Sequence record: MT661596.1
DNA: 64,000 nt
Direction: 5' to 3' (one strand)
The notes below the pieces were generated by a model that saw nothing but the letters and a program-made list of their open reading frames with translations, ran no database searches and was not told the DNA's origin. This document shows, in pieces, positions 61,609 to 63,598 of the stretch. Position 1 is the stretch's first letter, and every line of letters begins with the position of its first letter. Made by a program: the position numbers and the translations under genes.

Positions 61609-61694
61609 GGGTTGGTACTCAAGTGGTTAACGAGGGCAGACTGTAAATCTGCTGGCTTCGGCCTTCGGTCGTTCAAATCGACCCCAGCCCACCA
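61609..61694 (+). tRNA. tRNA-Tyr(GTA)
   Basis: cloverleaf with class II variable arm, loop CTGTAAA, encoded CCA. Confidence 0.95.
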
Positions 61695-61699
61695 AATAT

Positions 61700-61774
61700 T
61701 GGGGTATAGCTCAGTGGTAGAGCGGAGAGCTGTTAACTCTTAGGTCGTTGGTTCGAATCCAACTATCCCAGCCA
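61700..61774 (+). tRNA. tRNA-Asn(GTT)
   Basis: cloverleaf, loop CTGTTAA, GTTCGAATC, CCA. Confidence 0.95.
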
Positions 61775-61780
61775 ATTAAT

Positions 61781-61857
61781 GGCCCTTTAACTCAATCGGT
61801 TAGAGTAGAGCCCTCATAAGGCTTTAGTTACCAGTTCGAGCCTGGTAGGGGTCACCA
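61781..61857 (+). tRNA. tRNA(CAT), probably Ile2 (lysidine) rather than Met
   Basis: loop CTCATAA; acceptor GGCCC with C4:G69/C5:G68 as in E. coli ileX; CCA. Confidence 0.85.
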
Positions 61858-61859
61858 GT

Positions 61860-62362
61860 TAGTTCCTCCTTGTCAAGAGGTAACGTGGATAATGAGTATC
61901 AAGTTGATTGTTTAGATGTCTTTCAATCAACCGCACTAATCCAATGGATAGTTGCAGTGACTCACGTAATCCTAAGACTGTTATTAATCTGTGTACCATC
62001 GGGCAATTAATAATGACACCAACAACCGAAGGCTAAAGAGATGCCATTGCATCACATGAGTAATCCCAGCAGTCATGTCACCCTATATCCAACCTACAGG
62101 TGATATGCAAAGACTTAAAGGTCTCCTACATTAGGGTCGCTGTGAGGTTACAATATCAAAGGGTGGATATCCTGGTGTTGTTATGAACACCGGTGAATAG
62201 AATGGGTTTATCCTCTTTATAGGTTAGTGCCCACATAACTGTCTTGGTCGTTTGATACGATGACAACCTTTAACTGCGGGGGACTAAAAGTAAGTTACTT
62301 GCACTAACTTGCGAGCAGTTAACTAATTCAAGACGATACACGTATGGTTGTTGGCTGGCTGG
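61860..62362 (+). ncRNA. putative large structured ncRNA (~500 nt)
   Basis: no ORF in the track; many helices including the long-range pair 62019-62027/62346-62354; embedded in the tRNA array. Confidence 0.7.
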
Positions 62363-62454
62363 TCTATATTACTGTGTGTTTCGTGTCTCCATCTAACCGC
62401 GTGGTGAATATAAAGTGAAGAGCACAGCACTCTGAGCAAGCGGTGTCAAATTTA

Positions 62455-62531
62455 GGAGCCATAGTTCAGTTGGTTAGAACGCTACCCTGTCACGGTAGAG
62501 GTCGCGGGTTCGAGTCCCGCTGGTTCCGCCA
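62455..62531 (+). tRNA. tRNA-Asp(GTC)
   Basis: cloverleaf, loop CTGTCAC, GCCA end. Confidence 0.96.
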
Positions 62532-62537
62532 AACAAT

Positions 62538-62613
62538 GTTCTGCTCATCTAGCGGCTTAGGATTACGGGTTTTCAGTCCGTCCACCGGGGTTCGATTCCC
62601 CGGCAGAACACCA
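62538..62613 (+). tRNA. tRNA-Glu(TTC)
   Basis: cloverleaf, loop TTTTCAG, CCA. Confidence 0.9.
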
Positions 62614-62618
62614 AACAT

Positions 62619-62731
62619 GGAAAGGTGTGTTGGCAGAGTGCGTGAATGCGCTAACCTTTAAGTTGGTTAGTATAGGCTGACTCAGAAATGATAGGCTTAT
62701 CGTGGGTTGGAATCCCACACACGTCTTTCTA
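62619..62731 (+). tRNA. atypical class II tRNA-like element (Lys TTT or Leu TAA reading), no CCA
   Basis: GCAGAGTG..GAATGC D-arm, T-arm gtggg-ttggaat-cccac, ~35-nt variable arm, acceptor extendable to 12 bp. Confidence 0.6.
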
Positions 62732-62753
62732 TTTCTTTTTTTTTTTTATCAAT

Positions 62754-62860
62754 GGCGACAGTCTCTTTAAGAGACAAGCACCCAATGTTGTGATTAGAGC
62801 AACCTCTAATATGTCAACGGAATGCGGTAACCCCTGTGAAACTCAGGGTGTCGTCTACCA
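62754..62860 (+). ncRNA. CCA-ended tRNA-mimic RNA
   Basis: ggcgaca/tgtcgtc acceptor, ccctg-tgaaact-caggg T-arm, ...TACCA end; non-tRNA interior hairpins. Confidence 0.6.
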
Positions 62861-62932
62861 AATATGGTTTGCTGTCGAAACGTGAGAGTTAAATAAAATA
62901 ACTTTCCTTGGCGGTAAGCCATTCCCATTAAT

Positions 62933-63010
62933 GGTGGTGTTAGTTCAGTTGGTTAGAATTCAGGAATGTGACTCCTGAGGTCGAGAGTTCAAATCTCTCA
63001 CACCACCCCA
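62933..63010 (+). tRNA. tRNA-His(GTG)
   Basis: G-1:C73, loop ATGTGAC, CCA. Confidence 0.93.
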
Positions 63011-63091
63011 ATTGTGAGTTACCTGATATGAGACAGCTACAGCAGCAAGTCAGGTAGCTCATATTTACACTTATACCGATTAGAGGTCAAA

Positions 63092-63433
63092 ATGAGTGAA
63101 CAGAATCTGGCGACTGTTAGTAAAAATGGTTGTTCGAAAGTTTGTTCAGCTAAAAGTTGTAATGAGTTCATCTTCATTAGCTCTAATGATAAACTAACAT
63201 GTAAGCGCTGTGGCACCCCAAGATTGCTAAGCCATGGCGAAGTCATTGATGCGTTCCCTAGAAAGAACAGTGAGTTCTTTGACCGGGTAAATCAGCTGAG
63301 TCGTTACTCCTTTCATAAAGGCACTGACTCCGTTAAACGAGTGCCCGACCCAGGCGGTAACTATATCGACTACCATGAAGTTGTAGAACTCATGTCATTA
63401 GCCGATGAACGCATTCGTGAATTAAGTAAATAG
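63092..63433 (+). CDS. hypothetical protein with Cys-rich (Zn-ribbon-like) N-terminus
   Basis: CSAKSC...CKRC; GAGG RBS. Confidence 0.65.
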   Translation: MSEQNLATVSKNGCSKVCSAKSCNEFIFISSNDKLTCKRCGTPRLLSHGEVIDAFPRKNSEFFDRVNQLSRYSFHKGTDSVKRVPDPGGNYIDYHEVVELMSLADERIRELSK

Positions 63434-63443
63434 CACCACTATG

Positions 63444-63516
63444 TAGAATGTAGCTTGAGGAAAAAGCAGCCGACTAATAATCGGGGATTTCGCCAGTTCG
63501 AATCTGGTCATTCTAC
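63444..63516 (+). tRNA. atypical tRNA, anticodon AAT (Ile), no encoded CCA
   Basis: acceptor tagaatg/cattcta, D-stem gctt/aagc, loop CTAATAA, T-arm gccag-TTCGAAT-ctggt. Confidence 0.7.
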
Positions 63517-63598
63517 AACCCTATCATGATTGATGATACCACGTAAGAAAAATATTTATTAGCACGTACGCTAATCCATTTTTTACGGGGAATTCATC

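What the first reader, a model, noticed from the sequence alone, without database searches (positions are those of the whole stretch)
62754..62860. 107-nt CCA-terminated tRNA mimic with a non-tRNA core
Seen: a 7-bp acceptor-like stem (62754-60/62849-55) stacked on a 5-bp T-like arm with a 7-nt loop (ccctg-tgaaact-caggg), ending ...TACCA like the neighbouring tRNAs. The D and anticodon arms are replaced by gtctc-tttaa-gagac and a longer gttg..attagag-caac-ctctaat..caac arm. Established: bacterial and phage Y RNAs (YrlA) and tmRNA use an acceptor+T-arm mimic joined to a foreign domain. Inference: an undescribed tRNA-mimic RNA, e.g. a decoy for tRNA nucleases or sensors, or a Y-RNA-like adaptor.
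Basis: partly seen in the sequence, partly recalled or inferred. Interest (0 to 1): 0.7.

Follow-up and report, generated by a model that had tools for sequence, protein, structure and literature searches.

The report
Conserved tRNA-like RNA in jumbo phages
A 107-base gene in the tRNA cluster of Proteus phage 10 encodes an RNA that copies the amino-acid-accepting end of a tRNA but has no anticodon; it belongs to an unannotated RNA family conserved in related nucleus-forming jumbo phages, and its role is still unknown.

Summary
A strict tRNA-end descriptor hits only true tRNAs and this element, against 0.003 hits per shuffled window. ARAGORN and Rfam (tRNA, tmRNA, YrlA) do not recognise it.

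The main new result is that it has relatives. Erwinia Agricanvirus phages (17 GenBank records, none annotated there) and six uncultured contigs carry a 146-153 nt RNA at the syntenic site. It shares the four-way junction, the odd T loop UGARANU, an RCC tail and U at -1. Nine sequences give 99% pairing and 9 compensatory pairs. A model built without the Proteus sequence finds the candidate as the top hit in the whole window (19.9 bits, E about 0.01).

Among near-identical Proteus phages the element is well conserved (1/107 variable sites against about 5% around it). It is nevertheless missing from about half, always together with the neighbouring odd tRNA-Leu-like gene.

Most likely it is a non-decoding tRNA mimic matured by RNase P and 3' trimming, like T4 species 1 RNA. 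Its trans function (decoy or adaptor) is inferred only. It is not a Y RNA.

The parts
62754..62860 (+). Gene for the 107-nt tRNA-like RNA (whole element)
   Evidence: MFE four-way junction, z -3.84. Only non-tRNA hit of the strict tRNA-end descriptor. Top hit in the whole window of model R3, which was built from relatives only: 19.9 bits, E 0.013.
62754..62760 (+). Acceptor stem, 5' strand (GGCGACA); pairs with 62849-62855
   Evidence: 7 bp with one G.U. Across the family, 4 of the 7 pairs show compensatory changes.
62761..62775 (+). Hairpin 1 in the D-arm position, stacked on the acceptor with no linker; closed by GUC/GAC
   Evidence: Pair probabilities 0.8-1.0. The relatives' consensus has the same GUC...GAC-closed hairpin directly after the acceptor, with one compensatory pair.
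62780..62828 (+). Long irregular arm replacing the anticodon arm; apical tetraloop CAAC; no 7-nt anticodon loop
   Evidence: It corresponds to the long arm of the relatives, which has 5-6 compensatory pairs. Its 5' strand AAUGUUGUGAUUA matches AH06 GAUGCUGGGAUUA at 10 of 13 positions.
62832..62848 (+). T-like arm: stem CCCUG/CAGGG and loop UGAAACU (62837-62843)
   Evidence: Pair probabilities at least 0.95. The loop is identical in L017, and UGARANU holds in all members. Three of the 5 stem pairs are compensatory across the family.
62849..62860 (+). Acceptor 3' strand (62849-62855) and tail UACCA (62856-62860)
   Evidence: The relatives have RCC directly after the stem. Natural indel borders fall exactly at this CCA.
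62748..62753 (+). Leader AUCAAU, with U at -1 before G+1 (predicted RNase P site 62753/62754)
   Evidence: The leader type is the same before tRNA-Met, Glu and His in the window and before the relatives' elements, where it reads ..CAAU|G or ..UAU|G.
62736..62747 (+). T12 run between the Leu-like gene and the element; its length varies among strains
   Evidence: It is one of eight T runs of 8 nt or more in the window, all on the + strand and mostly behind hairpins. Indels of 3, 5 and 6 nt here break the overlapping ORF 62688-62885, which argues against coding.
62624..62726 (+). Odd tRNA-Leu(UAA)-like gene that is gained and lost together with the element
   Evidence: Rfam tRNA 36.6 bits, an enlarged (8-10 nt) anticodon loop, no CCA, missed by ARAGORN. 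Where the contig reaches that far it is present in every locus that has the element, and absent from every locus that lacks it.
62864..62922 (+). Conserved trailer hairpin between the element and tRNA-His
   Evidence: Pair 62867-62919 is G-C or A-U; pair 62868-62918 is U.G, C-G or U-A. The hairpin is kept in the deletion variants.

Best explanation
The element is the gene of a small, non-decoding tRNA-like RNA. It is a shortened member of a family conserved in Agricanvirus-like nucleus-forming jumbo phages.

Proposed pathway:
1. It is transcribed on the + strand with the phage tRNA cluster.
2. The acceptor/T-arm minihelix, U at -1, G at +1 and the 3' (R)CC(A) make it a substrate of host RNase P, which would cut between 62753 and 62754.
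3. Host 3' trimming (and CCA repair in the relatives) would leave a discrete, stable RNA of about 107 nt.
4. That RNA presents the top half of a tRNA (acceptor end, T arm, probably an elbow). A conserved hairpin and a long arm stand where the D and anticodon arms would be, so it cannot decode.
5. It then acts in trans by occupying a protein that reads the tRNA acceptor/T-arm end. My preferred guess is a decoy or sponge for a host factor aimed at tRNA 3' ends.

What is shown: the structure, the family, the covariation, the conserved end signals and the dispensability.
What is inferred: transcription, RNase P and 3' processing, stability, and above all the trans-acting role.

Rough likelihoods: a real structured RNA gene, about 0.85; RNase P processing, about 0.65; a decoy role, about 0.2.
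For: Structure and chance.

Not a tRNA, tmRNA or YrlA.

Relatives. A descriptor scan found the same architecture 5 nt after tRNA-Asn in Erwinia phage RAY and in contig L017, with the same rare T loop. The relatives occur in 17 GenBank records, all unannotated at that site. Further members are L033 and L051-L053.

Covariation.
- Nine relatives: 99.1% of cells paired, 9 compensatory pairs, covariation score 0.248 against 0.140 in shuffles (0/500) and at most 0.08 when slid.
- With the Proteus sequence added: 14 compensatory pairs, score 0.293.

Membership.
- Model R3, built without the Proteus sequence, ranks the candidate first in the whole window: 19.9 bits, E 0.013, at exact coordinates. The next hit scores 12.2 bits and the tRNAs at most 7.2.
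- R3 finds nothing in the strains that lack the element or in the SNUABM_48/SA002 clade.

A unit in its own right.
- It is a conserved island whose homology block ends within a few nucleotides of the predicted ends.
- It persists in AH06, L017 and L052, where no tRNA gene is nearby.
- Columns 8-39, about 31 nt of hairpin 1, are invariant in eight of the nine relatives; L052 differs there.

Processing signals. U at -1 and G at +1 are present in all lineages, and RCC follows the stem.

Constraint within Proteus phages. There is 1 variable site in 107 nt (A77G, in a linker) against 30/597 in the noncoding gap and 4.5-6.7% in ORFs. My Poisson arithmetic gives P of about 0.02.

Unit boundary. Three kinds of natural indel end exactly at its CCA.
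Against: - There is no direct evidence of a discrete transcript or of its ends. The only RNA-library signal is a low-depth contig over 62617-62835 that could be DNA.
- The Proteus copy has an extra U between the stem and ACCA, so its tail is not a canonical NCCA.
- Acceptor pair probabilities are only 0.4-0.8 in precursor context.
- Plain sequence alignment between the Proteus copy and the Erwinia type is not significant (z 1.0-1.6). The reciprocal model R1 gives only E 0.12. Homology therefore rests on combined structure and sequence, the shared rare T loop, and synteny.
- About half of the near-identical Proteus phages lack it, so it is dispensable there.
- Nothing identifies a binding partner. 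Neighbouring ORFs have no Pfam domain.
Confidence: 0.55

Rival explanations
1. It is a cis-acting punctuation element. The tRNA-like fold exists only to recruit RNase P and 3' processing, so that the flanking RNAs (tRNAs, or mRNAs in the relatives) are separated or stabilised. The excised piece has no function of its own.
For: In AH06, L017 and L052 the element lies between protein genes with no tRNA nearby. The leader and the RCC tail are conserved. A conserved hairpin follows it in the window.
Against: RNase P needs only the acceptor/T minihelix. Yet hairpin 1 is invariant over about 31 nt in eight of the nine relatives, and the long arm keeps its pairing through 5-6 compensatory changes. 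That points to selection on the body of the RNA.
Confidence: 0.15
2. It is a decaying relic. The Proteus copy is a shortened, degenerating remnant of the family (or of a tRNA) that may still be processed but no longer does anything.
For: It is 107 nt against 146-153 nt in the relatives. It has an extra U before ACCA. It has been lost several times among close relatives through three different junction types. The same cluster holds other odd tRNA-like genes.
Against: Where present, it is among the least variable stretches of the cluster, at 1/107 against about 5% background. All four helices remain intact, with compensatory rather than disruptive differences from the relatives. Canonical tRNAs (Glu, Asp, His, Asn, Met) are lost just as readily, so loss does not single it out.
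Confidence: 0.12
3. It is an aminoacylated carrier. The RNA is charged by a synthetase that does not need an anticodon, and it delivers the amino acid to a non-ribosomal reaction or to the ribosome, tmRNA-style.
For: It has a perfect acceptor stem and a conserved RCC(A) end. The altered T loop (G55 A56) might weaken use in normal translation.
Against: It lacks the alanine identity pair: G.U sits at 2:71, and the relatives have A2-U71 and C3-G70. There is no tag reading frame or pseudoknots, and ARAGORN and Rfam tmRNA models are silent. The Proteus tail has an extra nucleotide. The discriminator varies (A, G, U).
Confidence: 0.07
4. It is a Y-RNA-like (YrlA) adaptor that tethers a Ro60-type protein.
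For: It is a tRNA mimic encoded by a phage. Its relatives do carry a separate YrlA-like element about 1.25 kb downstream.
Against: RF02553 gives no hit on the candidate, even at E up to 10. Its ends form the acceptor stem, not a Ro-binding helix. The T and D loops are non-canonical. No TROVE/Ro60 domain occurs in the ten neighbouring ORFs.
Confidence: 0.03
5. It is a chance fold in a spacer.
For: The loose descriptor is common, at 3.9 per shuffled window.
Against: The strict descriptor gives 0.0033 per shuffled window. The fold has z -3.84. An independent family model gives E of about 0.01. The relatives covary.
Confidence: 0.01

Closest known systems
Bacteriophage T4 species 1 RNA (rnaC), a small stable RNA of the T4 tRNA cluster
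   Same: It is encoded inside a phage tRNA cluster, on the tRNA strand, directly next to tRNA genes. Its 5' and 3' ends form an acceptor-like stem that closes a multi-branch junction. A T arm abuts the 3' strand, and long hairpins stand where the D and anticodon arms would be, with no anticodon loop. It has no Rfam family of its own. From memory, not tested here: it is a stable RNA cut out by the tRNA-processing enzymes, and its function is still unknown.
   Different: There is no detectable homology: model R1 finds nothing in the T4 region. T4 rnaC has a canonical GGUUCGAAUCC T arm, an imperfect acceptor stem with U.U mismatches, and no encoded CCA. The present family has the T loop UGARANU, a perfect 7-bp stem and an encoded RCC(A).
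YrlA, the bacterial and phage Y RNA (Rfam RF02553; PMC4201824)
   Same: It is a non-coding tRNA mimic found in phages. It imitates the acceptor, T and D parts of a tRNA and lacks an anticodon arm. M. smegmatis YrlA is cut by RNase P and receives CCA (PMC4201824).
   Different: In YrlA the tRNA-like module is permuted (T arm, closed acceptor-like stem-loop, D arm). Its RNA ends form the Ro60-binding helix, its T and D loops are canonical, and its gene lies next to Ro60. None of this holds for the candidate.
tRNA-like domain of tmRNA
   Same: It has an acceptor stem, a T arm and a CCA end, with the anticodon arm replaced by a long helix. It is processed by RNase P.
   Different: tmRNA has the G3.U70 alanine identity pair, a canonical T loop, pseudoknots and a tag reading frame. 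ARAGORN and Rfam tmRNA models find nothing here. The G.U of the candidate is at 2:71 and is A-U in the relatives.
mascRNA/menRNA and gammaherpesvirus 68 vtRNAs (tRNA-like, processed, uncharged)
   Same: From memory: these are cloverleaf-like RNAs excised by the tRNA 5' and 3' processing enzymes. They carry CCA and are not used in decoding.
   Different: They belong to eukaryotic or animal-virus systems, are much shorter (about 60-75 nt) and keep an anticodon-like arm. There is no meaningful Rfam mascRNA hit on the candidate.

Membership tests
tRNA (RF00005) | Cloverleaf with an anticodon arm (5-bp stem, 7-nt loop), recognised by tRNA models | tested here: not met
   ARAGORN tRNAs in the window but not this element. 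Rfam tRNA gives no hit even at E up to 10 in a 321-nt search. The only apical loop of the long arm is 4 nt.
tRNA (RF00005) | Canonical T loop (UUCRANY) and a D loop with GG | tested here: not met
   The T loop is UGAAACU. The loop of hairpin 1 is UUA/UUUAA, with no GG.
tRNA (RF00005) | 7-bp acceptor stem stacked on a 5-bp T stem, G53-C61, U54/A58, 3' CCA | tested here: met
   The deviation is two nucleotides (UA) before CCA instead of one.
tmRNA | Recognition by tmRNA models; G3.U70; tag reading frame and pseudoknots | tested here: not met
   There is no ARAGORN tmRNA call and no Rfam tmRNA hit on the element. The G.U lies at 2:71, and the relatives have A2-U71 and C3-G70.
YrlA / bacterial Y RNA (RF02553) | Match to the YrlA covariance model | tested here: not met
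   There is no hit on 62754-62860 at E up to 10. The same model scores 37-44 bits on a different element in RAY, AH06 and L033.
YrlA / bacterial Y RNA (RF02553) | RNA ends form the Ro60-binding helix; the tRNA-like module is internal and permuted | tested here: not met
   The ends form the acceptor stem with a free CCA tail.
YrlA / bacterial Y RNA (RF02553) | Gene adjacent to a Ro60 (TROVE) gene (PMC4201824) | tested here: not met
   Ten ORFs within about 6 kb have no Pfam domain at E up to 0.01. The rest of the genome was not scanned.
T4 species 1 RNA kind (tRNA-cluster small stable RNA) | Lies in a phage tRNA cluster; acceptor-like closing stem plus T arm plus non-tRNA arms | tested here: met
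T4 species 1 RNA kind (tRNA-cluster small stable RNA) | Sequence or structure homology to T4 rnaC | tested here: not met
   Model R1 finds nothing in the T4 tRNA region L015.
T4 species 1 RNA kind (tRNA-cluster small stable RNA) | Accumulates as a discrete stable RNA excised by tRNA-processing enzymes | not testable with these tools
   The only signal is a low-depth contig from one RNA library over 62617-62835.
Agricanvirus-type tRNA-like RNA (family defined here) | Match to a covariance model built from the nine Erwinia-type members only | tested here: met
   R3 gives 19.9 bits, E 0.013, as the top hit in the whole window with filters off, at exact coordinates. R2 gives 15.1 bits. The E-values are rough. 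Plain sequence alignment is not significant.
Agricanvirus-type tRNA-like RNA (family defined here) | Four-way junction: acceptor; a GUC/GAC-closed hairpin stacked on it; a long arm; a T arm with loop UGARANU | tested here: met
   The Proteus copy has both arms shortened (107 nt against 146-153 nt).
Agricanvirus-type tRNA-like RNA (family defined here) | U at -1, G at +1, and RCC directly after the acceptor stem | tested here: inconclusive
   U-1 and G+1 are met. The tail is U-ACCA, with one extra U compared with ACC/GCC in the relatives.
Agricanvirus-type tRNA-like RNA (family defined here) | Syntenic position (the tRNA region between the terminase block and PhuZ, + strand) | tested here: met
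   The immediate neighbour differs: it follows the Leu-like gene here, and tRNA-Asn or a CDS in the relatives.

The most novel reading that the evidence does not exclude
A whole clade of nucleus-forming jumbo phages (the Agricanvirus group, uncultured relatives and Proteus phage 10) maintains a dedicated anticodon-less tRNA mimic. The host's tRNA enzymes mature it, and it has a specific trans function. Candidates are neutralising a host immune effector that modifies or cleaves tRNA acceptor ends, serving as a non-ribosomal aminoacyl carrier, or acting as a passport for RNA traffic out of the phage nucleus. The swapped T-loop letters (G55 A56) together with the U-rich loop of hairpin 1 would then rebuild the tRNA elbow with different base pairs.
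Probability: 0.22. Interest if true: 0.8.

Novelty: new variant of a known kind. Interest (0 to 1): 0.62.

Why it matters
Phage tRNA clusters have recently been tied to the arms race with tRNA-targeting bacterial defences. Yet the non-tRNA small RNAs in them, such as T4 species 1 and 2, have had no assigned function for about fifty years.

This work gives:
- a second, independent family of such RNAs, defined by covariation;
- its presence in culturable phages of two hosts (Erwinia amylovora and Proteus mirabilis);
- natural isogenic-like strains with and without the gene.

Those strains make the question directly testable. The family is unannotated in all 18 GenBank genomes that carry it and is absent from Rfam, so it is also a concrete annotation gain for chimalliviruses.

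Tried and rejected
1. Reading it as a tRNA with a long variable arm, a tRNA-Sec-like 8/5 form, or an intron-containing tRNA. No 7-nt anticodon loop can be drawn, and all models are silent.

2. Shifting the register by one nucleotide (start at U62753) to give G3.U70 + A73 + CCA, an alanine/tmRNA identity. Rejected because the relatives have A2-U71 and C3-G70.

3. Protein coding by the overlapping ORF 62688-62885. Rejected because strain indels of 3, 5 and 6 nt in the T run break the frame, and the record has no annotation there.

4. Homologue searches that failed:
- blastn and tblastn of the element and its neighbour ORFs against phages and IMG/VR;
- the single-sequence model R1 on relatives;
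- model R2 with default filters (it needed filters off);
- a degenerate T-arm pattern in genome contigs, which gave 17 hits, about the chance expectation, none confirmed.

5. Covariation within the Proteus phages was impossible, because there is only one variable site.

6. The 597-nt gap 61858-62454 as a large structured RNA (GOLLD/ROOL-like). There is no Rfam hit, and the fold has z -0.62.

7. Neighbouring proteins as clues: no Pfam domains.

8. Literature. Nothing was found on Proteus phage 10 RNAs or on an Agricanvirus tRNA-like RNA. The T4 genome review could not be read.

9. The SNUABM_48, SA002, L054 and L055 relatives have no member in the syntenic region.

Full report
**Source and setting.** The window is Proteus phage 10 (MT661596.1, 223 kb; 100% match). 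It is a phiKZ-like nucleus-forming jumbo phage, with split RNA polymerase, tail sheath and terminase and an FtsZ/PhuZ-like gene just downstream. The finding lies in an unannotated tRNA cluster at 61609-63517 on the + strand. The order is: tRNA-Tyr, Asn, Met; a 597-nt gap; Asp, Glu; an odd Leu-like gene (62624-62726); a T12 run; the candidate; a 73-nt spacer; tRNA-His; a 113-aa ORF; and an Ile(AAU)-like tRNA.

**Checking the observation.** The unconstrained fold of 62754-62860 is a four-way junction made of:
- a 7-bp acceptor stem;
- a hairpin stacked directly on it;
- a long irregular arm ending in a CAAC tetraloop;
- a 5-bp T stem with a 7-nt loop that abuts the 3' acceptor strand;
- a single-stranded UACCA tail.

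The energy is -35.9 kcal/mol, z = -3.84, and none of 200 shuffles is as stable. The fold survives in 200-400 nt of context, though the acceptor (probability 0.4-0.8) and the base of the long arm (0.2-0.6) have competitors. A loose tRNA-end descriptor is common by chance, at 3.9 per shuffled window. Adding G53-C61, U54 and A58 leaves only five true tRNAs and this element, against 0.0033 per dinucleotide-shuffled window.

**Not a member of a curated family.** ARAGORN finds no tRNA or tmRNA here. Rfam 15 gives no hit of any relevant family, even at E up to 10 with permissive filters on 321 nt. No 7-nt anticodon loop can be drawn. The overlapping ORF 62688-62885 is broken by strain indels of 3, 5 and 6 nt in the T run.

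**Close relatives of the phage.** Public assemblies hold many near-identical phages, mostly as contigs of about 224 kb in Proteus assemblies. I fetched 17 loci through neighbouring proteins.
- Where present (window, L005, L006, L008, L010; a contig-end fragment in L022), the element shows a single variable site, A77G, in the junction linker.
- Among five genomes it has 1 segregating site in 107 nt. The noncoding gap has 30/597, the flanking ORFs 4.5-6.7%, and the spacer 3/73. My Poisson arithmetic gives P of about 0.02.
- It is absent from L013 and L027 (tRNA-Glu joined to the spacer), and from L007 and L023-25 (tRNA-Asp joined to the spacer).
- It is also absent from L009, L011 and L026, where the first 25 nt of Asp are fused to His 8-77, leaving a broken chimera.
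- The junctions fall exactly at the CCA of the element, inside the repeat ACCAAAYAUGG that follows both tRNA-Glu and the element.
- The element and the Leu-like gene are always present or absent together.
- On a flank tree, carriers and non-carriers are interleaved, which suggests repeated loss or recombination.

So in this species-level group the element is a discrete, tRNA-like unit. It is conserved when present but dispensable, as are the canonical tRNAs beside it. These genomes are too similar to test covariation.

**Distant relatives.** Sequence searches with the element and its neighbour ORFs found nothing. By tail sheath, the closest phages are the Erwinia Agricanvirus group (68% aa) and SNUABM_48/SA002 (61%).

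I ran the strict descriptor without the CCA requirement on their syntenic regions. It turned up one non-tRNA hit in RAY, 5 nt after tRNA-Asn, and one in an IMG/VR contig (L017). Both have the same unusual T loop, UGAAA(G/C)U.

blastn then showed this element in all 17 Agricanvirus records, with no feature annotated under it. A degenerate pattern and a neighbouring protein (gp202) brought in L033, L051, L052 and L053.

The nine distinct sequences (146-153 nt) give an RNAalifold consensus with:
- an acceptor stem (7 bp);
- a hairpin closed by GUC/GAC and stacked directly on the acceptor;
- a long arm;
- a T arm.

In this consensus 99.1% of cells are paired, and 9 pairs show compensatory changes spread over all the main helices. 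The covariation score is 0.248, against 0.140 in shuffles (0 of 500) and at most 0.08 for slid partners.

The element is a conserved island between unalignable flanks, and its homology block ends within a few nucleotides of the predicted ends. It is kept in AH06, L017 and L052, where no tRNA gene is nearby. All members have U at -1, G at +1, and RCC directly after the stem.

**Does the Proteus element belong to that family?**

For:
- It has the same four-way architecture, with no linker between the acceptor and hairpin 1, and the same GUC/GAC closure.
- Its T loop is identical to that of L017.
- The T stem CC..G/C..GG differs by two compensatory pairs, and acceptor pairs 1-4 are shared.
- The long-arm 5' strand matches AH06 at 10 of 13 positions.
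- It occupies the same genomic region.
- Model R3, built from the nine Erwinia-type sequences only and run without filters over the whole window, ranks it first: 19.9 bits, E 0.013, coordinates 62754-62859. The next hit scores 12.2 bits and the tRNAs at most 7.2.
- R2 gave 15.1 bits.
- R3 is silent on strains lacking the element and on the SNUABM_48/SA002 clade.
- Adding the Proteus sequence raises the compensatory pairs to 14, on an alignment fitted to the model.

Against:
- Plain global alignment is not significant (z 1.0-1.6).
- The reciprocal single-sequence model gives only E 0.12, although the top hit overlaps the L033 element.
- The calibrations are rough.
- The Proteus copy is about 40 nt shorter and has an extra U before ACCA.

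I put membership at about 0.75. The alternative, convergence on the same odd T loop at the same locus, seems less likely.

**Mechanism.**

Shown: a conserved, covarying RNA structure that reproduces the acceptor/T-arm minihelix and the 5' and 3' end signals of a bacterial pre-tRNA, but has no anticodon.

Inferred from established knowledge:
- Bacterial RNase P recognises the 12-bp acceptor/T stack, prefers U at -1 and G at +1, and pairs with the 3' RCC. The RNA should therefore be cut at 62753/62754.
- Its 3' end would then be trimmed to CCA, or completed by the CCA-adding enzyme in the relatives (which end in ACC/GCC). This would yield a discrete stable RNA.

Hairpin 1 is invariant over about 31 nt in eight of the nine relatives, and the long arm is maintained by compensation. 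This indicates that the body of the RNA is under selection. That favours a trans-acting RNA over a mere processing tag.

Its partner is unknown. Because only the tRNA top half is mimicked, I favour a protein that reads the acceptor/T end. The accessory, often-lost behaviour in the Proteus phages fits a counter-defence role, but this is a guess.

A further speculation concerns the loops. The changed T-loop letters (G55 A56 for psi55 C56) and the U-rich hairpin 1 loop (for G18 G19) could rebuild the elbow with different pairs.

**Rivals.** The alternatives are a cis-acting punctuation element, a decaying relic, an aminoacyl carrier, a Y-RNA-like adaptor, and chance. They are weighed in their own sections.

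**Comparison with known systems.** The closest analogue is T4 species 1 RNA (rnaC). It lies in the T4 tRNA cluster and folds into an acceptor-like stem, a T arm and two long hairpins. It is not homologous, has a canonical T loop, and has no Rfam family.

YrlA, tmRNA and mascRNA-type RNAs work similarly in part, but each fails one or more defining features here. Notably, the Agricanvirus relatives carry a separate element about 1.25 kb downstream that matches the tRNA-like module of YrlA below threshold (37-44 bits; gathering score 69). It has the permuted order of T arm, closed acceptor-like stem, then D arm.

**Verdict.** The element is a real, previously unannotated tRNA-like RNA gene and a probable member of a newly defined family in chimalliviruses. 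It is a new variant of a known kind (phage tRNA-cluster small RNAs and tRNA mimics). Expression, ends and function remain to be shown.

Noticed in passing
window 62624-62726 (+): A tRNA-Leu(UAA)-like gene missed by ARAGORN. It scores 36.6 bits on Rfam tRNA, has an enlarged anticodon loop (8 nt on a 7-bp stem in the MFE), a long irregular variable region, and no encoded CCA. It is always gained or lost together with the candidate, as one 247-nt unit (62614-62860).
   Followed up: partly
L002:21143-21206 (RAY), L028:2898-2962 (AH06), L033:3334-3398: A sub-threshold match to YrlA (RF02553, 37-44 bits; gathering score 69) about 1.25 kb downstream of the family element in the Erwinia-type phages. 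It has the permuted order of T arm, closed acceptor-like hairpin, then D arm. This is a likely phage Y-RNA-like gene, and it is unannotated. No equivalent was found in L001 of Proteus phage 10.
   Followed up: partly
window 62864-62922 (+): A conserved 59-nt hairpin in the spacer before tRNA-His, with covariation among strains. Pair 62867-62919 is G-C or A-U, and pair 62868-62918 is U.G, C-G or U-A. It is retained in the deletion variants and may be a processing or stabilising signal.
   Followed up: partly
window 61858-62454 (+): A 597-nt stretch inside the tRNA cluster with no ORF longer than 46 aa and no Rfam hit. It is not unusually structured (z -0.62), yet it is present in all relatives. 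One contig from an RNA library skips 62325-62448, ending 6 nt before tRNA-Asp. Whether this is a strain deletion or a processed form is unknown.
   Followed up: partly
L009:6371-6447, L011:6372-6448, L026:2488-2564: Natural deletion variants in which the first 25 nt of tRNA-Asp are fused to nt 8-77 of tRNA-His through their shared D-arm sequence. The acceptor strands of the resulting chimera no longer pair. These variants are not monophyletic on the flank tree.
   Followed up: partly
L007:5614-5688 and L023:1902-1976; L007:5697-5806: In some Proteus phage 10-like strains, tRNA-Asn and tRNA-Met are replaced by other tRNA-like sequences. One is a cloverleaf with an 8-nt anticodon loop and no CCA. 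The other is a 110-nt element with a short closing stem, a long arm and a small 3' hairpin.
   Followed up: partly
window 63443-63517 (+): A tRNA called Ile with anticodon AAU, which is unusual for bacteria and phages. It has no encoded CCA and follows a 113-aa ORF (63092-63433) with two CxxC pairs that sits between tRNA genes.
   Followed up: no
window 5453, 9572, 16678, 17828, 43240, 58559, 61390, 62736 (+): All eight T runs of 8 nt or more in the 64-kb window are on the + strand, usually 0-17 nt behind a GC-rich hairpin. Several have the motif UUUAUGC between the hairpin and the run. This looks like a phage-specific transcription signal.
   Followed up: no
L007, L011, L014 and cluster members P0004-P0007: Near-complete copies of this lytic-type jumbo phage (contigs of 220-224.5 kb) sit in assemblies labelled Proteus mirabilis, P. 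terrae and P. columbae. This suggests carrier-state or contaminating phage in bacterial genome projects.
   Followed up: no
L054:5961-6215: A relative of the SNUABM_48 clade encodes a Tad2-like (PF11195) protein, from an anti-Thoeris sponge family, a few kb from its tRNA genes. This fits the idea that the region is an accessory counter-defence neighbourhood.
   Followed up: no
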